A stretch of DNA of 64,000 nucleotides from Magallana gigas (taxonomy: Eukaryota). This document shows positions 2,018 through 38,630 of this stretch, in pieces. The stretch is taken from the NCBI RefSeq assembly GCF_963853765.1, contig NC_088860.1, positions 30,194,001-30,258,000 on the forward strand, given 5' to 3'. The notes below the pieces were generated by a model, which saw only the letters and a list, made by a program, of their open reading frames with translations, made no database searches and was not told the DNA's origin. The position numbers and the translations under genes were made by a program. Positions within the stretch are counted from its first letter, which is position 1, and every line of letters starts with the position of its first letter.

Positions 2018-2413
2018 TTATGCACTGTCTACTGTCATGAATCTGTTGTGTGGCAGGGATTGGACGGTGTTGGCTTCTTCGATTTCTGTATCTGGGTTTG
2101 GTGCACAGTCTCCCTCTTCTTCTTCTAGGATGGAATAGCGGTTTGATAAATTAATTGATGAATAGAAGCTACAGGGTGGTGATGATATAGGCGATGATGG
2201 AAGCCTCGAACGTTTTCGTTGTTTGTATGGTGAAGGAGAGTCTCTGGATCTTTTCTTCTGAGCAGGTGTTTTGGTCGATGGCGAAGACTGCGGCGTCACT
2301 GTAGTGGATGGTAATGAGTGAGGAGACAATGGTGGTGACGTGGGCACATGTCTTGTAGTCTTTGGTAGTTTAGACTCCTTAGTCTTTTGTCGAGGAGGCG
2401 ATGGTGAAACATC
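2018..2413 (-). pseudogene. C-terminal Ser/Pro-rich half of the OTU/vertnin-like ORF interrupted by the 2414-8627 insertion
   Basis: Encodes DVSPSPPRQKTKESK...LSNRYSILEEE...DSA*. It continues in frame from ...FDQRVFE (ending at 8628) once 2414-8627 is removed. Its first ~40 aa are a diverged copy of the repeat at 8650-8760. Confidence 0.7.
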
Positions 2414-3219
2414 CATGCCAAGAAATGCCGTCCGGTTTAGAATAAGCCTAGCTAACGGTCTTCAATTATACACTTAATTAAGGTCAGCCGCATTTGCTTG
2501 AAAACCCGCAATAAGGGATCGAGCCGAACTAAAGTTTCAGAGATTTGGGTCAGCGGCTGTTTACGACAGTCTTTAGAGTGCCAATGTTTATAGCTTAGAG
2601 ATACGTGTTGGGATAAGAATAAAAAGGACACAAGCTAAGATTTGGAAGACAGACACTTTGTAATTAAAAAAAATAATTATGTGATTTTCCTCTTTTACTT
2701 ATTCATCGTCTCCATATTGTTTACACTTGGAAACACAATCTCTAAGAATTATTTCTCTCTGAAATACAGAATGTTATGTTTTGTTTGGGGGGTTTTTTTT
2801 TTATAAACCTAGCATTTTTTAAAAAATTAAGCCGATATACGTACATGTAATATTGATGTACGTCATGTAAAGTGTTAAATACACGGGTATCTTTTTTGTT
2901 AAGAGAGTTTTAATTAAGGTATGGCTAACTAACCTTGTATTAAAGGAACTGAAGAAATTTGAAATATTCAATCGGATGCAAATGTATGACCACCGCAGGG
3001 TTTATTATTATGCGATGTTTCATATAATAAATGTTACATGAAAGTTTATAGCGTTAATTTTTAAGGTATGCTGTAGAATGTATATAACACTTTTTTATTG
3101 TTAGTTTTGAATATATTTCGTTAAACAGACACTGCACCGATCAATTATCTGTATTGGTGGGAAATCCGAAATGCAAAAATTCTGGTAAACCGGTAAAAAC
3201 TAAAACAAAAGTTGTAAAA

Positions 3220-6200
3220 ATGTCGAATTTTTTTCGACCATGGGTGGAGACACGGCCGGCTGTACCTGTGCGTAGACGTGTAATGTTGCCGTTGAATAAC
3301 AACATGCAGGTACGTAACTACTTGTTTATGGATGATTCATAGTGTAGGTGATCAATACATTAAAGTTACCCACTCAGTAGAATGATAACTATAGGCTATA
3401 TTTTAGCAAAAAATTAAGCCGAAATACTTATATAGTGAATATGCAGAATTTATATAAAAGTCAATGTATGTGTATTTGACAAATTTATGTTGATATTGTA
3501 TGTCATGTCAGTTATTGAAGCTTTATAATTTTTTTAATTTTTATTTCACATGCATATTTTATTGCAATAGGACCACGATGATATGGAAAATAAGAAAACT
3601 CCACGCAAAGTAAAAGGATTTTTTGAGCTGAAACATTCTCAAAGAGGAGAAAGGAAAAGAAAATACCAAAGCGCTTTTCAAGAAGCTTCAAGCTGTGTTC
3701 ACAGTGATATTTCCTCCATCAAAGTCCAGTTCAATTTTGATAATGGACATGTTTTATCCTTTTTTCCCCGCAAAGTGTCCCCTGATGAAAATGCTAGTTT
3801 GGAAGATGAAGGTGTTAAGAAATCTCAAGATCTTGCTGTAATTCAACAGGTTATTGCAGTTAAGGACAAGTTCAGAATTTCTGACGAAGCTTTACATGAA
3901 CTTCATATGATTGGTTCAATAATACCAAGCAAGTCAGCCATCAATACAGAAAAATACCGTCTCAACACAACTCTTGAAATAATGAGCCATCCAACAGTAA
4001 GTACATGTACCGTGCTTTTTTATGTGTTGACCACTGACTTATTTAGCACGTTTTATTATCTTATCATTTGAATATCAAATTTAGAAACCGATCGATCATA
4101 GCACAAGCCAATTTACTTTTATTTATTTTTTTAACAAAGGCAGACTGCAGTACTAGAAAGCTAGAGCACATTCTAGAGTTTGTACTTCAACACAAAAAAT
4201 ACCAGAAGTATATTGAGAATGACACTGTTACCCTGCGTTTTTCCTGTGATGGTGCCAAAATTGCCAAAAATATCTCCTCAGTAAGAGGGGTGTTCAAGAT
4301 TTTGGCACCAAGACAGTCATTGCCAGATAAGCTTGAAGATTTGAGCATGTGTCCAGAAGATGAGTTTACTCTTTTCTTTTACATTGGTGAGAAACTTTGT
4401 ATTTATTGAAATTTCCTGTCATGTATTTTGGAATTATTATTTCGATTATCACATGTTTATTTCAATTAAGGAGATGAAAATCGATGCAGTTTAGAGGAAT
4501 ATGCCTCTGGGACATTAAGAGACATGGAAAATGTTCAATTGAATGGAATTGTAATCAATGGAAGAAAAATCTCTGTAAAGTGGTAAAGTTATCTCATCAT
4601 CTACGGTTATCGTTTTTTTTATTCTATACCCTATTTGTTATTATAATATCATTTCAAATTCTAAACTGGTACAATTATATATTTTGTAGGATAATGACTT
4701 GTGATTGGAAGGCACTTGCCTTACTGAGGGGAATTAATGGCGCTCAATGCGAATTTTTCTGCATGTGGTGCCACTGCTCCAAAAAGCAGATATGCGATTT
4801 CAGTAGTAAGTAACTGTTGTAAATTGATAAAATGATACAAACATTGTAATAAAAACAATAGCAATTGCTGGACAACTAATGTGATTTTATAATGTTTTTT
4901 GTAGTCCCATCTTGGTTGATACAGAGATCTAAAGAAGAACAACAAACTGTTCTAAATTCTGAAAAGAAAACGTTCGGGTACAAAGATACAGATCTCTGCC
5001 CTTTCATTTCATACCATGACATGCCCATTGATGATCTTCACATGCGCATAAGGATTTCTCTAAAGCTCTTCAATCAGGTACATTGTCTCTTATTAATATA
5101 CACGAATGTATACTTTTAACGACTCTGCTAACTATCTGCATACACAAGATCTCCTTGCTTGATTTTGACAATTTTAAATTCAGCTTGTGACCTGGGCAAT
5201 AGACCAGAAATCTGAAGACAATTTGAAAAGAGAACTGAAACGCGTAGGTGTCAGTTTCAGAATGTGGGAGGAAAGGGGGGATGACAAATTGAACACCAAA
5301 GTGAGGAAATGGTCTCAACCAACAGGTATATATATGCCTTTCTTTAAAAAAAAATACTATAAGTGTTTGCAGTTCTTGTAGCAAATCTTCTGAAAAATAT
5401 TTGCCATTTCATTTGTAGGTGATGATTTACGTAAAATTATAAGAGACGTTCAAATCCATCATATTCTGGACAATAAAAAGGACAGGCACTACGTATCAAT
5501 AGAAAGCCTTTCAGTACAGCAGTTGAGGGACGAATTAACTAACAGACAGCTTTCCAAAAAAGGAAAAAAACCCGAACTTGTAGCCCGATTAAAAGATGCT
5601 GTCGGAAATAACACTAAGGTATATTTACAGAAACTCAAATTCACTGAATAACATTTATATTTCCTGAATGTTTACATAGTAATATAAAACTTTTCATTCA
5701 TGTTGTTTTAGATGAGGAGGAATGTAGGCTCTCGTCTTCAGGTATCGTACGACTTTTCAGAAGATGAAGAACAGGACCTGGACGTCGCAGCCCTGCAAGA
5801 TCTGTGGTCAGGTTTCCATACGCTCATGGAAAGTCTCCGGGCATTACCTGGAACAGATAATTACAAAGATATGGAAACTTTTGCAAAAGAAGCAAAAGAA
5901 TGGGCCACTGAATTTCGAAAGCAAACCTTCGATGAAGATGTTATCCCATACATTCATGGTGTGTAAAAATGTTAAAGATTCTATAAAGGAATCATACAGC
6001 CTATCCCTACTTCTTTCAGGGTATAAAATTCATTTTGTTTAAATTACATTTTCAGCTATGGTTTATCATGTACCACAGTTTCTGCAGACATACCACTACA
6101 TACATGATATCGGGGTTGCCCAAGTTGAGCGTAAAAATTTTGACCATCGTCAAGCGTACTTTGGAAGCACCAACAGAAATGGGTCCAAATGGAAAAAACA

Positions 6201-6425
6201 TGTCTCAAAGCAGGTACATACCATTATTCAGATAGTCAATCTGCTTGATTTGTTTCACAAATTTTTCTGCCTTCTGCAATGAATAATTAATCAAAGATAA
6301 ATATGCATTTCAGTCCTTGTCATACTTGTGATCTTTAATTACAGATTCTTGAGAGGGAAAATAGAATGCTTTGGTCCAGTCTACATGGAACTGTACGTGA
6401 AAAAAGAAAATATGTAAAGTCTTAA
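3220..6425 (+). CDS. RAG1-like (Transib/Chapaev/RAG1 clade) DDE transposase, 663 aa, 11 exons, with inserted SAP domain
   Basis: Exons 3220-3309, 3571-3996, 4140-4386, 4471-4582, 4690-4805, 4905-5077, 5184-5325, 5419-5618, 5712-5958, 6056-6213, 6345-6425. All introns are GT-AG and phase-compatible; 1992 nt with no internal stop. Motifs: FSCDG (D, 4248), TCDWK (D, 4703), CMWC at D+19/+22, IDDLH, PYIHAMVYH (H-x4-H), AQVE (E, 6127) at H+20. These spacings equal mouse RAG1 D600/D708/C727/C730/H937/H942/E962. RKVKGFFELKHSQRGERKRK resembles the nonamer-binding-type helix. The first ATG choice (3220) is inferred. Confidence 0.88.
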
Positions 6426-8473
6426 ATACCGTCGTTTAGCTACAGTCCCAGTAACCATGTTTCTACGAGACCTTGTAAAAGTTACATGAATCCATGATGG
6501 ACCACGAACATACAGTATTACAGGGTCACATAGCTGTGGTCGGTTCTCCTCGGCATCTTTCCATGTGCATCTAAACAAAGATTTTTATAATGAAGCAGAT
6601 CTTTATTATTATCAAGCAATATTTATTAAGAAGCCCACAAAGATGAACAAATATTGTATTTCTATGTATAGAAATGTTGTTTTTTTATATTAGAATAATA
6701 TTGTATCACACTTTTGATATTATTGTTATTGTTTTTACTATTACAATTAAGTAAATAATGTATAAAATTGATGTTCCTTATTGCAATAATATTGTATCAC
6801 ACATTTGTTATTATTATTGTTTTTTTTTAAATTAAGTAAATAAACATTCACATTGGATTAAATTTATGTAATCATACCTTTTACAATTATTGTGTTGGTA
6901 TTGCTTTCTCTCCTTATATCCCCACCAGACATGAATAAATTCTTTGAAGGAGACAAATGTTTCTGTTGATGTTTTGTAACATCTATTTGACCAGTTCTCT
7001 CCAATGGCAGAAGTCATTTCTTCACCTGTAAAAATAAACATAAATTACTTAACAATTATTTTTAGTAACCGAACACTTGCATTCCAAGTATGTCTTTCAA
7101 GATACCTCCTGTCTCCACTTGCATGGGACCAAAACTTTAAATAGACTTGTCATATGCTCAAGAAAACAATTATCATAATATTGCTTCAGATAGTTCATTA
7201 CCTGTGAGGTAGAAATCCACATTTCCATTGTCTGTTGGCAGAGTATCCATCAAAGACCTGAAGTATTTATTAAAACTTGCACAAGAAAAAGGCACTTTCA
7301 CTGTTGTCCTCGACTGGATGCCTAATGCACCATCAGGTGTACGGCGTGCATCGCCTAAACTGTCAAAGATGGCCTGTCGCAGTGCCATAATGTCATCAGG
7401 GTTGTTCCTGCAGTCTATTTTGTTGGAATCTAAATTCCTGCGGTGAAGATGACAAGAGAGGGGGTTTCCTTTATTTCTTTCAATGAATTGCTGCAATTCC
7501 TGGTTTCCATCTAAACTGACCCAGGTTGATGGTCCCTCCCAGTCCTTCCATTTTACTAGCACTTCTTGCTCCCTCCTCTCTAAAATGTCTTCAATCTCCC
7601 ATAGTTTCTGAGATAAATTGTTGAGAATAGTTTAAAACATGAATGATTATTCTATTATTGTTTTTCTTAATTAGTTTGGATAATTCATAATTTTTCCCGA
7701 TGTAGGATATTCGTGATCTAAGAGTGGCGCTAGATCCGCCTACACACTTTGACTGAGATTTGTATACCTGCTTCAAATAAATATAAATAATAGTCTAATA
7801 TAGTTCTAAAATACACATAAAGGTAGATCAAAAGGGAACCCTAACGATATTTAACGATCGCAAACCATAATATATACATAGATATGTCTATACATATTAT
7901 AAACATCATCAGGGACTTGTACTATGATTATTACAACTATTCTTAGAAATGAATATGTTACAAAAGTTTAAATGTAAGTATATACGATATTTGTATAATA
8001 ATATTTATTGTTATACTTTCATGTTAAATACTGAAATCTGATTGGTTAAGACGCAGTTAATAATATTTTCTATTACCCTCAGCGTTAGCAACGCACTTAG
8101 CAACGGGTAACATTAAAAAATGTTACATGCGCGAAAATTATGCGCGTACGGTTCGCTGTAGAATTCACGTTATTCCTATATAAAAGCAGTAAAATTTTCT
8201 TAAAAATTAAGACATTCAGTATAACAAAATAAATAGTGCCTGTTTGGGAGGATAACAGTTGAAATTGACACCCCTCGAAAACCATTGTCAACCTCCGCTT
8301 CGCGTCGGTTGACAATGGTTTTCTCGGGGTGTCAATTTCAACTGTTACCCTCCCAAACAGGCACTATTTATATAGTGTACCTCTTTCGACTTGTTCTCCT
8401 TTAAACTTCTAAAATTTAAATTTTCCTCCCAATCTCCGAATCTTACAGGGGCTCTTCTCTTTCTCTGTGCCAT
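6381..8473 (-). CDS. Chromodomain-containing partner protein, 256 aa, 4 exons, convergent with the transposase
   Basis: Exons (minus) 8473-8447 (MAQRKRRAP, donor GTAAGA), 7607-7202, 7025-6878, 6570-6381. GT-AG introns with phases 0/1/2 consistent; 771 nt open. N-terminus KLWEIEDILERREQEVLVKWKDWEGPSTWV matches the chromo fold pattern. The remaining ~200 aa are unrecognised and include HNNCKRCTW...LC. Confidence 0.8.
8002..8372 (+). mobile_element. Non-autonomous element ending in a ~143-bp palindrome (family A), inserted in intron 1 of the chromodomain gene
   Basis: 5' TTATACTTTCATGTTAAATACTGAAATCTGATTGG; 3' hairpin ATAAATAGTGCCTGTTTGGGAG...CTCCCAAACAGGCACTATTTAT (8229-8371). Relatives at 37628-37856 and 38458-38630. 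Superfamily (Crypton-like or Helitron-like) not determined. Confidence 0.8.
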
Positions 8474-8627
8474 TTCTTAGATAAGAATGCAGCTGAAGAA
8501 AGCACACAGGGAGCTCGATTTCACTTAATCGGTTCATCGCCGTGGTAACGCTGACCGCCTGGGATGTGGTCACTAATTTATAACGGGGTTGTGAAAGCGG
8601 AATTTTGGAGCAGAATTTCTTGGCATG

Positions 8628-9295
8628 TTCAAACACACGTTGATCAAAAGTAGGCGATGGCAACGAATATGGAGACGATGGTGGTGATGTACGCACATGC
8701 CTCGTTGTTGTTGTTACCTTGGATTGTTTTGTCTTTTTTCGAGGAGGCGAAGGTGATCTTGCTGATTTGGGTGTTGATTTGTTCCCGCGGCTAATTTTGA
8801 AGCTGAAGTTGAACTCCCTCCTGTCATTGTTTGGCACAGACGATGTTGATTTTGATGGCACGACGGGAACAAAATGGTTGGGTGTCCACTGCTTGTTTGG
8901 TTTAGGTGGCATGGTACTGGTCCACATGATTTTAATGGCAGTGTCACTGATGGGATCCTCGGGTGACGTTTTCAAGTTCAACTTTTGGAAGGCCAGGTCT
9001 TGAGTACCATTAACGCATGGGTAAAGTATTTCCATAGGCACGTTGATTATGTTGGATAGTGCAAGTATGGTCCAAACACATGAATATTGTCTTGGTCGGG
9101 CACACTCCTTGTTTAAAGCGGTGTCATATGTTGGCGAGAGACTAGCCCGATCCTTGTGTTGTTGGATGTTTTCTTTGTTGAGGAACATCTCCAAGCAAGA
9201 TTTAAAACGTAGCTCTGTGGCCAAGGACTCGTCTCCAACCAACAGCGTTGAAACGGAATTAAAAAGGCAATCAGACTTGGTAGATTTTGTGATGG
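8628..9295 (-). pseudogene. OTU-type cysteine protease (vertnin-like) domain ORF, 5'-truncated and split by the transposon
   Basis: Part of track ORF 8409..9395: SDCLFNSVSTLLVGDESLATELR ... WTILALSNII ... IMWTS ... WTPNHFVPVV. This is the Cys-box/His-box pattern of OTU/vertnin-like domains, but the usual GDGN before the Cys is degenerate. Confidence 0.7.
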
Positions 9296-36990: not shown

Positions 36991-37627
36991 AGTTGGAGAT
37001 CTGGTGCCTCTATATGGAGATACAGAACAACTTATGTGAAGAAACATTCAGTCATATAATCATATCAAATGGTTAATTCTGACGTTATTACGAATCATAA
37101 AGAATTCACATTGGGGTTTTTTATTAACATTTTTGTGATCATTTGAAAGAGCATAATCATACAGCTTGCATTTATAATGAAAACAGACATATTACATTTG
37201 GTTATTTTTGTATATTTACGTACAGTAAATAGTTTCCCTGTTTTTCTTATGGATTTAATCAAATGCTTTGTTTGGTGATTCATGCGGCCGGATGGATATT
37301 GGCGACATGGCAGGGAAAAAAAATCCTGCTATGGTCGCTTCCTTCATGAACCGCATGAATCATCAAAGAAAGCATTTTAATACTGTTTATATTTTTCATC
37401 TTTCTCTTAAAAGATGATGAATTGGTAATAAAAAGTAAGTAAAAGTAACTAAATTATTGTTAATCTGAATCGGAACATTAAAGAAAAGAAATGCATGTAG
37501 CTAAATATTATCATATGGGGTCTTAGAATTGCATTTCTTGTAATTTTTAAACACTGTTATAGATGCATAGTTTAGTTTTTAAAAAGTCAACTTTAATTCA
37601 AGTACACATGTAGCTGTAATAAATATT

Positions 37628-37856
37628 ATTATACTTTCATGGAAAATACTTAAATCTGATTGGTTTAGACGCGGTTTAAATCCGTTCTATTGCGGCCCTC
37701 AGCATTAGCAACGCACTTTGCAATGGGTAGCACTATATAAATAGTGCCTGTTTGGGAGGGTAACTGTTGAAATTGACACCCCGAGAAAACATTGTCAACC
37801 GACGCAAAGCGGAGGTTGACAATGGTTTTCGAGGGGGTGTCAATTTTAACAGTATT
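37628..37856 (+). mobile_element. Family A palindrome-ended element (partial)
   Basis: Homologous to 8002-8372, including ATCTGATTGGTT and ATAAATAGTGCCTGTTTGGGAGG...GTTGACAATGGTTTTC. Confidence 0.8.
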
Positions 37857-37859
37857 ATA

Positions 37860-38452
37860 TAAGTAGTTTCTTTCCAAAAATGGTCACCTAACTCCGTAGT
37901 GCAGTGGGTTAGAGGGTTTACTACGAACCTGTAAGTCATGCGTTTGAATCCCGCTGGGGGTTTTACAATGTTTACCTTTACAAATATTTTTAAGGTGCCT
38001 CACTACACCTTGAAATAGTTTCTCAGATCAGCAGAAAATTACTTGATTATGATACAAAGCGTGATGGATAAGAAGTATATATGTCAAATAGGCGAAAAAA
38101 TGTGCAATTTTAGATAAAAAATGATATTTTCAAAAATTTCATTCAGTAAACATAAACAAAAGCCCCAGGTGGATTCGAACTCATGACCTGCGGTTCATAA
38201 GCCTGAAGCTTTAACCACTGAGCTACGACGATATACATCTGAATCGATTGATACAAACAGTTTAATAAAACAGTTAAATCGCCATCTTGTGACGTATTGT
38301 CTTAAAAAATGTAAGTCTCGGTGTAGTGAAGTACCTTAAAAGCTATTTTTTGGTTAAATATTGTAAAATTTGAAAATTCTAAACCAATGAAAATTTTTCA
38401 ATTATTTAGTACTTTAATCCACATTAATATCGACAGATGTCACATATCAACT
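37860..38452 (+). mobile_element. 5'-truncated copy of the 22538-22894 MITE, interrupted by a second MITE
   Basis: AAGTAGTTTC, GTAGTGCAGTGGGTTAGAG and AAAGCTATTTTTTGGTTAAATATTGTAAAATTTGAAAA are shared with 22538-22894. Confidence 0.75.
37994..38335 (-). mobile_element. TTAA-flanked MITE with reverse-oriented tRNA-like core, nested
   Basis: TTAA|GGTGCCTCACTACACC ... GGTGTAGTGAAGTACC|TTAA; internal GGATTCGAACTC...TTAACCACTGAGCTAC (B and A boxes on the minus strand). Confidence 0.85.
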
Positions 38453-38457
38453 TAAAT

Positions 38458-38630
38458 AGAAATGACGTGAATTCTATAGCGAACCGTATGCGCATGATTT
38501 GCGCGCATGTACCAATTCGTTGTGTTACCCGTTGCCAAGTGTGTTGCTAACGCTGAGGGTATTAGAACGGATTACCAACTGCGTTTAAACCAATCAGATT
38601 TCAGTATTTAACATGAAAGTATAATAAATT
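38458..38630 (-). mobile_element. Family A element, 5' part, inverted
   Basis: Reverse complement of 8005-8175 (CCAATCAGATTTCAGTATTTAACATGAAAGTATAA). Confidence 0.8.

What the first reader, a model, noticed from the sequence alone, without database searches (positions are those of the whole stretch)
4248..6129. Transposase keeps exact RAG1 catalytic and zinc-ligand spacing
Seen in the spliced product: second Asp (TCDWK) to CxxC is +19/+22, the His pair is H-x4-H (PYIHAMVYH), and second His to Glu is +20. These equal mouse RAG1 D708-C727/C730, H937-H942 and H942-E962. All ten introns are phase-compatible with no stops, which implies recent activity or selection. Ten introns is unusually many for a cut-and-paste transposase.
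Basis: partly seen in the sequence, partly recalled or inferred. Interest (0 to 1): 0.7.

Follow-up and report, generated by a model that had tools for sequence, protein, structure and literature searches.

The report
Oyster CMCT transposase with RAG1-type core
An intact, spliced and expressed jumping-gene enzyme in an oyster has the catalytic and zinc-binding layout of the immune recombinase RAG1, but published work describes that layout as the shared signature of a large transposase group (EnSpm/Mirage/Chapaev/Transib), so it marks group membership and no special link to RAG1.

Summary
An 11-exon, 10-intron gene (3220-6425, + strand) encodes a 663-aa protein. It has D209, D297, C316/C319 (+19/+22 from D297), H584-x4-H589 and E609 (+20 from H589). 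These three spacings equal the published mouse RAG1 positions D708/C727/C730 and H937/H942/E962. All introns are GT..AG and all are seen spliced in RNA-run contigs. The spacings are invariant in relatives from a sea anemone to molluscs.

Two independent AlphaFold models find only RAG1, BbRAGL and HzTransib at the top of the PDB.

The interpretation needs narrowing:
- C(2)C, LH and H(4)H are the published signature of Chapaev and of the wider CMCT clade, which includes RAG1.
- Predicted EnSpm-type (Transposase_21) structures match as well as RAG1 does.
- No RAG1, Transib or other Pfam or PDB sequence profile matches.
- D1-D2 and D2-E distances differ from RAG1.
- The ends are CATG..CATG without a 5-bp duplication.

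So this is a CMCT-clade, Chapaev-like transposase of a two-gene element in Crassostrea gigas (LOC105327491). It is under purifying selection (dN/dS 0.16). Its own features are a SAP domain in the insertion region, many conserved introns and no Chapa zinc finger.

The scan had already reported sister copies on other pieces of this genome.

The parts
3220..6425 (+). Transposase gene: 11 exons, 10 GT..AG introns, 663 aa. It differs at 3 residues from C. gigas LOC105327491 (P0042).
   Evidence: Spliced contigs from RNA runs. Paralogue transcripts.
3220..3309 (+). Exon 1 (30 aa, MSNFF...NNNMQ). The following intron, 3310-3570, is spliced in one RNA-run contig and retained in another. If it is retained, the next in-frame ATG is at 3583.
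   Evidence: X2 record 14 against X11 record 2.
4248..4250 (+). First catalytic Asp, D209, in LRFSCDGAK. It lies at the end of predicted strand beta1. Asp-Gly is at least 90% conserved in 40 sequences.
4703..4705 (+). Second catalytic Asp, D297, in TCDWK, directly after predicted strand beta4.
4760..4771 (+). C(2)C motif, C316-M-W-C319, at +19/+22 from D297. It is the counterpart of RAG1 C727/C730 by spacing. C321 (+24) is also invariant.
5036..5041 (+). LH motif (L375-H376 in DDLHMRIR), the third conserved His of the Chapaev/CMCT signature.
5499..5600 (+). SAP domain (Pfam PF02037, E 8e-12), inserted between the C(2)C and H(4)H motifs.
5955..6069 (+). H(4)H motif, H584 (5955-5957) and H589 (6067-6069), split by the phase-1 intron 5959-6055. 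It is the counterpart of RAG1 H937/H942 by spacing.
6127..6129 (+). Catalytic Glu, E609, in QVERKN, +20 from H589, on a predicted helix.
2414..2426 (+). Left terminal inverted repeat, CATGCCAAGAAAT.
   Evidence: The same 13-mer sits at both ends of the Mytilus element and, with one change, at the very start of contig L004.
8615..8627 (-). Right terminal inverted repeat, a perfect complement of the left one. Homology to the Saccostrea copy stops exactly here.
6878..7609 (-). Convergent partner gene on the minus strand. CT..AC junctions at 6570/6878 and 7023/7200 appear in RNA-run contigs, and a 267-278-aa partner is called at the same place in Saccostrea, Mytilus and a paralogue transcript. It is part of the element but not of this finding. 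The limits given are approximate.

Best explanation
This is the transposase gene of a two-gene cut-and-paste DNA transposon in Crassostrea gigas. The element spans 2414-8627 and has 13-bp CATG-initiated terminal inverted repeats. The enzyme belongs to the CMCT clade (EnSpm/CACTA, Mirage, Chapaev, Transib and RAG1), and by motif signature it is most like Chapaev.

Inferred mechanism, by analogy with RAG1 and HzTransib:
- D209, D297 and E609 sit on an RNase H-like fold and bind the catalytic metal ions that nick and transfer the transposon ends.
- C316/C319 and H584/H589 are far apart in sequence but come together around one zinc ion. This ties the large insertion domain to the core.
- In this lineage the insertion domain carries a SAP DNA-binding motif.

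The equality of the three spacings with mouse RAG1 reflects inheritance of this zinc module from the common ancestor of the clade, not a special RAG1 affinity.

Shown here: the gene model, splicing, expression, motif conservation, purifying selection, RAG1/Transib-like predicted fold of the DDBD-preR-RNase H part, and the inverted repeats.

Inferred only: metal and zinc binding, catalysis, present-day mobility, and the exact lineage within CMCT.
For: Gene model and motifs:
- Junctions appear in RNA-run contigs from several studies, and full spliced ORFs of a paralogue.
- The protein differs at 3 residues from C. gigas LOC105327491.
- Motifs and spacings are invariant in oysters, mussels, a clam, a gastropod, a Nematostella fragment and contig L004.

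Fold:
- The full-length model (pLDDT 48) gives Foldseek ranks 1-41 that are all RAG1, BbRAGL or HzTransib (E 3e-6 to 1e-2); the next hit is Hermes at E 0.23. The alignment is colinear, model 116-600 against mouse RAG1 460-953.
- The 291-aa sub-model (pLDDT 61, pTM 0.55) gives Foldseek ranks 1-49 that are all RAG1 or Transib family.
- An exhaustive VIA search of 48,161 chains puts RAG1 first (Z 10.1, rmsd 4.6 A, 190 residues, model 1-196 against 454-716), then BbRAGL 9.0 and HzTransib 8.0. Unrelated chains start at 5.7.
- The ESM Atlas shape search returns Transposase_21 clusters (TM 0.64-0.65), RAG1 and Transib-like clusters (0.59-0.60) and DUF1280 clusters (0.59) together. The feature search gives the same mix.

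Literature:
- C(2)C, LH and H(4)H are the Chapaev signature.
- The CMCT clade, including RAG1, shares C(2)C and H(3-4)H and mostly 5'-CA..TG-3' termini.

Transposon nature and selection:
- The inverted repeats are perfect and are conserved in Mytilus.
- Flanks are unrelated between species.
- dN/dS is 0.16 overall and 0.085 in the core against a 91%-identical copy.
Against: - No sequence profile supports any named family. Pfam finds only SAP, and PDB profile searches find only SAP domains. Assignment rests on motifs, predicted folds of modest confidence and language-model features.
- Both models are of low to middling confidence, and the ZnH2 half was never modelled well.
- Termini are CAT..ATG, not the CAC..GTG called invariable for Chapaev.
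- There is no N-terminal Chapa zinc finger: 2 Cys in the first 175 residues.
- No target-site duplication is visible outside CATG in two complete copies.
- I could not compare with Repbase sequences or build a tree.
- Mobility of this particular copy is not shown.
Confidence: 0.78

Rival explanations
1. The enzyme is a true member or sister of the RAG1L/Transib lineage. On this view the identical spacings are lineage-specific, and the element is a RAG-like transposon in which a different chromatin reader replaces RAG2L.
For: - The spacings equal RAG1.
- RAG1, RAGL and Transib are the only strong PDB matches.
- RAG1 clusters rank first in the feature search of residues 140-400, score 0.97.
- The gene has a convergent partner.
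Against: - The PDB holds no EnSpm or Chapaev structure, so RAG1 is simply the only clade member available there.
- Where predicted structures of the whole clade are available, Transposase_21 clusters match at least as well.
- No RAG1-named Pfam model or RAG1/Transib PDB sequence matches, even at E up to 10.
- D1-D2 and D2-E distances differ from RAG1 by 20 and 58 residues.
- Termini are CATGCC, not CAC(A/T)GTG-like, and there is no 5-bp duplication.
- The LH motif and H(4)H are described as Chapaev hallmarks.
Confidence: 0.08
2. The gene, with its partner, is a domesticated host gene in molluscs and no longer a mobile element. The intact frame would then reflect host-level selection, not transposition.
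For: - Intron positions are conserved in oyster, mussel and gastropod.
- dN/dS is 0.16.
- Spliced expression is seen in many runs.
- NCBI annotates it as an ordinary LOC gene.
- Another note of this scan reads a copy elsewhere as a fixed host pair (unchecked).
Against: - The 13-bp inverted repeats are perfect, identical to those in Mytilus, and found at the exact start of a repeat-bounded contig of a distant relative.
- Homology to the Saccostrea copy stops exactly at the repeat, and flanks share nothing.
- Several copies 91-99.8% identical exist in oyster data, and both at least 99% and 95-99% variants occur within single runs.
- A MITE-like repeat is nested inside.
Confidence: 0.15
3. The match to RAG1 spacing is coincidence, and the Cys and His residues have no zinc-binding role.
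For: - Only three spacings match, while the two larger distances do not.
- Zinc binding was not tested.
- The C-terminal half of the model is unreliable.
Against: - The residues and spacings are invariant from Cnidaria to Mollusca.
- The same motifs are the recognised signature of the clade.
- The structural alignment is colinear with RAG1 through residue 953, with the offset expected if H589 pairs with H942.
Confidence: 0.03

Closest known systems
[quoted passage not shown]
   Same: [quoted passage not shown] Found in animals. Possibly a 4-bp duplication, if CATG is the target.
   Different: - Termini are CAT..ATG, not CAC..GTG.
- There is no N-terminal Chapa zinc finger.
- It has ten introns, where Chapaev3 has one or two exons.
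- A SAP domain sits in the insertion region.
- A second, convergent gene is present.
- Sequence relatedness to Chapaev could not be tested here.
RAG1 / RAG1L / Transib (PDB 4WWX, 6B40, 6PQN)
   Same: Predicted DDBD-preR-RNase H architecture (Z 8-10). DDE plus C(2)C and H(4)H. D2 to C(2)C, H to H and H to E spacings are identical to mouse RAG1. Two-gene layout with a convergent partner, as in ProtoRAG.
   Different: - No detectable sequence-profile similarity.
- D1-D2 is 88 against 108, and D2-E is 312 against 254.
- No CACAGTG-like heptamer ends and no 5-bp duplication.
- The partner is not RAG2-like.
- There is no RING or NZD domain.
EnSpm/CACTA transposases (Pfam Transposase_21 + DUF4218)
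   Same: Best shape matches among predicted structures (TM 0.64-0.65). Same order of motifs. Many introns (maize En/Spm, from my own knowledge).
   Different: No Pfam Transposase_21 or DUF4218 hit. H(4)H is present here, where the literature gives H(3-4)H for the clade. Termini are not CACTA.
CMCT clade as defined by Kojima 2025 (PMC12730594)
   Same: All listed clade features that could be checked are present: DDE, C(2)C, H(3-4)H and 5'-CA..TG-3' termini.
   Different: The expected 2-5-bp duplication is not evident unless CATG itself is the duplication. The lineage within the clade is unassigned.

Membership tests
CMCT clade (EnSpm/Mirage/Chapaev/Transib/RAG1) | DDE triad on an RNase H-like fold | tested here: met
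   D209, D297 and E609 lie at beta1, after beta4 and on a helix of the models. Catalysis itself was not tested.
CMCT clade (EnSpm/Mirage/Chapaev/Transib/RAG1) | [quoted passage not shown] | tested here: met
   C316-x2-C319 and H584-x4-H589, invariant in the family. The definition comes from PMC12730594.
CMCT clade (EnSpm/Mirage/Chapaev/Transib/RAG1) | 5'-CA..TG-3' termini | tested here: met
   The repeat CATGCCAAGAAAT is at 2414 and 8627, and also in Mytilus and L004.
CMCT clade (EnSpm/Mirage/Chapaev/Transib/RAG1) | 2-5-bp target-site duplication | tested here: inconclusive
   There is no direct repeat outside CATG in the window or Mytilus copies. A palindromic 4-bp CATG duplication cannot be told apart from CATG termini without an empty site.
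Chapaev | C(2)C, LH and H(4)H motifs | tested here: met
   CMWC, DDLHMRIR and HAMVYH.
Chapaev | Invariable 5'-CAC..GTG-3' termini | tested here: not met
   The termini are CAT..ATG.
Chapaev | N-terminal Chapa (NZD-like) zinc-finger domain | tested here: not met
   Only 2 Cys in residues 1-175 and no Pfam hit. The domain is described.
Chapaev | Sequence or phylogenetic grouping with Repbase Chapaev transposases | not testable with these tools
RAG1 / RAG1L / Transib | Match to RAG1 or Transib sequence profiles or solved-chain sequences | tested here: not met
   No RAG1-named Pfam family at E up to 10 for any of 15 members. Profile searches of the PDB return only SAP domains. I had no positive control for the newest RAG1 sub-domain models in the local Pfam copy.
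RAG1 / RAG1L / Transib | DDBD-preR-RNase H architecture | tested here: met
   Z 10.1 to RAG1 454-716, 9.0 to BbRAGL and 8.0 to HzTransib; unrelated chains are at most 5.7. The models are of modest confidence.
RAG1 / RAG1L / Transib | CAC-initiated heptamer-like ends and a 5-bp duplication | tested here: not met
   Ends are CATGCC, and the flanks ACATC and TTCAA (window) and ATATAG and GGTTTC (Mytilus) are not repeats.
RAG1 / RAG1L / Transib | Zinc bound by the C(2)C and H(4)H ligands | not testable with these tools
Only the motif spacing is shown.

The most novel reading that the evidence does not exclude
The family is a separate, so far unnamed CMCT lineage found from Cnidaria to Mollusca. 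It would have CATG ends, no conventional duplication, a SAP-bearing insertion domain, no Chapa finger and an obligatory convergent chromatin-reader partner. It would keep the ancestral zinc-module geometry unchanged, as RAG1 did. That would make it an independent natural parallel to the RAG1-RAG2 partnership.
Probability: 0.25. Interest if true: 0.65.

Novelty: new member of a known kind. Interest (0 to 1): 0.35.

Why it matters
It therefore adds no new evidence on the origin of V(D)J recombination.

What is useful is practical. This is an intact, expressed, selection-maintained CMCT transposase with a conserved partner gene and sharply defined ends, in a species with good genomic resources. 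No Chapaev- or EnSpm-type transposase appeared among the solved PDB chains in the two fold searches. An active representative could therefore show which RAG1 features, such as the zinc module, hairpin chemistry and partner dependence, are ancestral to the clade.

Tried and rejected
Sequence searches that found no transposase family:
- Single-exon searches of PDB sequences gave only chance hits, because the exons are too short.
- Pfam on single exons, on five relatives and on all 15 alignment members found only SAP.
- phmmer and profile searches of the PDB with P0015, A2 and A3 found no RAG1 or Transib.

Limits on homologues and models:
- Word-index homologue searches gave few full-length relatives, all molluscan, so the alignment for folding stayed shallow and the full-length model is poor.
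- The VIA re-ranking of that model was dominated by four-helix bundles matching residues 521-626. I discounted those hits as generic.
- One contig piece was misaligned by MAFFT and was dropped before folding.

Target-site duplication:
- No paralogous empty site exists in the window.
- The host repeat has only two units, so the 135-nt spacing across the junction has nothing to be compared with.

Other dead ends:
- Yuan and Wessler 2011 is not held in the library.
- Lanisha was considered and dropped, because it is a moss lineage.
- Pfam did not call a chromodomain in the partner of the paralogue transcript at E up to 0.1. I did not pursue this, because it belongs to another finding.

I could not hand the spliced window protein itself to the search tools. 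I used the database proteins P0042 (3 differences) and P0046/P0044 (99.3-99.8% identical) as stand-ins.
Full report
**What is in the sequence**

The window is AT-rich eukaryotic DNA. Earlier notes of this scan, the run labels and near-identity to a Crassostrea gigas protein identify it as oyster.

Between 3220 and 6425 on the + strand, eleven exons join into one 663-codon frame that ends in TAA. All ten introns are GT..AG and 84-261 nt long. The product differs at three residues from C. gigas 'uncharacterized protein LOC105327491' (P0042). It is 99.3-99.8% identical to two shorter database entries.

The finding's coordinates, 4248-6129, run exactly from the codon of the first catalytic Asp to the codon of the Glu.

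**Checking the observation**

In the 663-residue numbering the key residues are:
- D209, in LRFSCDGAK
- D297, in TCDWK
- C316 and C319 at +19 and +22 from D297, with further Cys at +15 and +24
- H584 and H589, in PYIH|AMVYH, with an intron between them
- E609, in QVERKN, at +20 from H589

PMC4914335 gives mouse RAG1 as D600, D708 and E962, with one zinc domain formed by C727/C730 and H937/H942. Two larger distances are not: D1-D2 is 88 against 108, and D2-E is 312 against 254.

The pattern is not chance:
- +19/+22(/+24) is found in all twelve proteins that carry the D2 motif, and H(4)H followed by E at +20 in all thirteen that carry the H(4)H motif. Together they come from oysters, Saccostrea, two Mytilus species, Mercenaria and the gastropod Batillaria.
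- A contig of a 30-40% identical relative also has +19/+22.
- A Nematostella vectensis fragment also has H(4)H followed by E at +20.

**Splicing and expression**

Contigs from four runs were laid on 2800-8700: two recorded as RNA and two guessed to be RNA.
- Two long contigs (2571 and 2082 nt) from different studies carry the nine junctions from 3996/4140 to 6213/6345.
- A third contig carries the 3310/3571 junction.
- One contig retains that first intron. In that case translation would start at the ATG at 3583.

Two further runs hold contiguous 663-codon ORFs of a 91%-identical copy, and another holds a 692-codon ORF of a 61%-identical relative.

Against the 91% copy, dN/dS is 0.16 (dS 0.16). 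It is 0.085 over residues 170-400. This is purifying selection.

**What kind of enzyme it is, by sequence**

Sequence profiles give no family. Pfam reports only a SAP domain (E 8e-12, 5499-5600) for the exons, for five relatives and for all fifteen alignment members. Single-sequence and profile searches of all PDB sequences return only SAP domains. By sequence, then, this is not a recognisable RAG1, Transib, EnSpm (Transposase_21/DUF4218) or DUF1280 protein.

**What kind of enzyme it is, by fold**

The full-length AlphaFold2 model is poor (pLDDT 48, 15 sequences).
- Its Foldseek ranks 1-41 are nevertheless exclusively RAG1, amphioxus BbRAGL and HzTransib (E 3e-6 to 1e-2). The next hit is Hermes at E 0.23.
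- The alignment is colinear, model 116-600 against mouse RAG1 460-953. That offset is the one expected if H589 pairs with H942.

A second model of residues 110-400 used 40 sequences and reaches pLDDT 61 and pTM 0.55. It shows the RNase H strand and helix order, with D209 at the end of beta1 and D297 just after beta4.
- Its Foldseek ranks 1-49 are again only RAG1, Transib or RAGL.
- A search that does not depend on Foldseek, over 48,161 PDB representatives, puts RAG1 first (Z 10.1, rmsd 4.6 A, 190 residues, model 1-196 against RAG1 454-716). BbRAGL follows at 9.0 and HzTransib at 8.0.
- Unrelated chains begin at Z 5.7. P-element transposase and retroviral integrases lie at 4.6-4.9.

**Why this does not single out RAG1**

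No EnSpm-, Mirage- or Chapaev-type chain appeared among the PDB matches in either fold search, so RAG1 and Transib are the only clade members that turned up there. Where predicted structures of the whole clade can be compared, the picture is even:

| ESM Atlas cluster type | TM-score to the 291-aa model |
|---|---|
| Transposase_21 (EnSpm) | 0.64-0.65 |
| Vertebrate RAG1 | 0.59-0.60 |
| Arthropod Transib-like | 0.60 |
| Fungal DUF1280-bearing | 0.59 |

The language-model feature search gives the same mixture:
- RAG1 fragments and a DUF1280 cluster both score 0.97 for residues 140-400, and Transposase_21 scores 0.93.
- RAG1_ZnH2 scores 0.86 and DUF4218 scores 0.80 for the C-terminal part. These are leads only.

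The literature says the same thing:
- C(2)C, LH and H(4)H are 'characteristic of the Chapaev superfamily' (PMC4079192).
[quoted passage not shown] They mostly have 5'-CA..TG-3' termini and 2-5-bp duplications, and are grouped as the CMCT clade (PMC12730594).
- Kapitonov and Koonin had already put Chapaev and Chapaev3 with Transib and RAG1 (PMC4411706).

The protein here also has the LH motif (DDLHMRIR, H376).

**The element around the gene**

Perfect 13-bp inverted repeats, CATGCCAAGAAAT, lie at 2414-2426 and 8615-8627.
- The same 13-mer bounds the Mytilus californianus element.
- One copy ends the Saccostrea element.
- A one-mismatch version is the very first base stretch of contig L004 of a distant relative.
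- Homology between the window and the Saccostrea copy stops exactly at 8627, and flanks share nothing between species. This argues for a mobile unit.

In Saccostrea, Mytilus and a paralogue transcript, a 267-278-aa gene lies tail to tail with the transposase. In the window, minus-strand junctions at 6570/6878 and 7023/7200 show the same partner. A highly repeated MITE-like insert sits at about 7999-8381.

No direct repeat flanks CATG in the window or in Mytilus. Either there is no duplication, or CATG itself is a palindromic 4-bp duplication and the true ends are CCAAG..CTTGG. I could not decide between these.

**Features of this lineage**

- Intron positions are conserved between the window, Saccostrea, Mytilus and Batillaria.
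- Many database fragments from unidentified samples end or begin at the same exon borders, for example after FYxG and within H(4)H.
- The Nematostella fragment reads through the H(4)H border, and contig L004 reads through two other borders.
- Ten introns is far more than the one or two exons reported for Chapaev3.
- The SAP domain lies between the two halves of the zinc module and is present in 10 of 15 aligned members.
- The N-terminal 175 residues have only two Cys and no domain hit, so the Chapa zinc finger of Chapaev and RAG1L is absent.
- Termini are CAT..ATG, not the 'invariable' CAC..GTG of Chapaev.

**Verdict**

The enzyme is a genuine, intact DDE transposase with the RAG1-type core and zinc-motif spacing, but those features place it in the CMCT clade, Chapaev-like by signature, and not next to RAG1.

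Within the clade its lineage is unassigned. Several Chapaev and Transib defining features were tested and not met. I could not compare with Repbase.

Other notes of this scan describe sister copies on other pieces of the same genome and reach compatible readings: Chapaev-type relatives, a clade-wide RAG1 resemblance, and a conserved gene pair. I treated them as leads and reached the clade assignment from my own searches.

Noticed in passing
window 7922-8512 (core 7999-8381; inverted repeat 8224-8298 / 8302-8376): A MITE-like repeat is nested in the element between the partner gene and the right end. It has a 75-nt hairpin at 91% complementarity, contig depth in the thousands in RNA runs, and related copies at 37617-38627 of the window.
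   Followed up: partly
window 2301-2413 and 8628-8784: The element interrupts a host sequence that contains two 75%-identical units spaced 135 nt (45 codons) across the insertion. Only two units exist, so they cannot serve as an empty-site control.
   Followed up: partly
window 5844-6430, minus strand: One run shows CT..AC junctions (5844/6219 and 6273/6430) on the strand opposite the transposase 3' exons. This suggests an antisense or read-through transcript from the partner gene side.
   Followed up: no
L005:2759-3595 (minus strand): The 278-aa partner ORF of the 91% paralogue overlaps the transposase 3' end by about 45 nt. Pfam gives no chromodomain hit at E up to 0.1, although another note of this scan calls the partner a chromodomain protein.
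   Followed up: partly
P0036 (490 aa): A database protein joins an N-terminal segment homologous to the first-Asp exon of this family to a retroviral-type integrase-like C-terminus. It is probably a chimeric gene model or a nested insertion.
   Followed up: no
   Followed up: no
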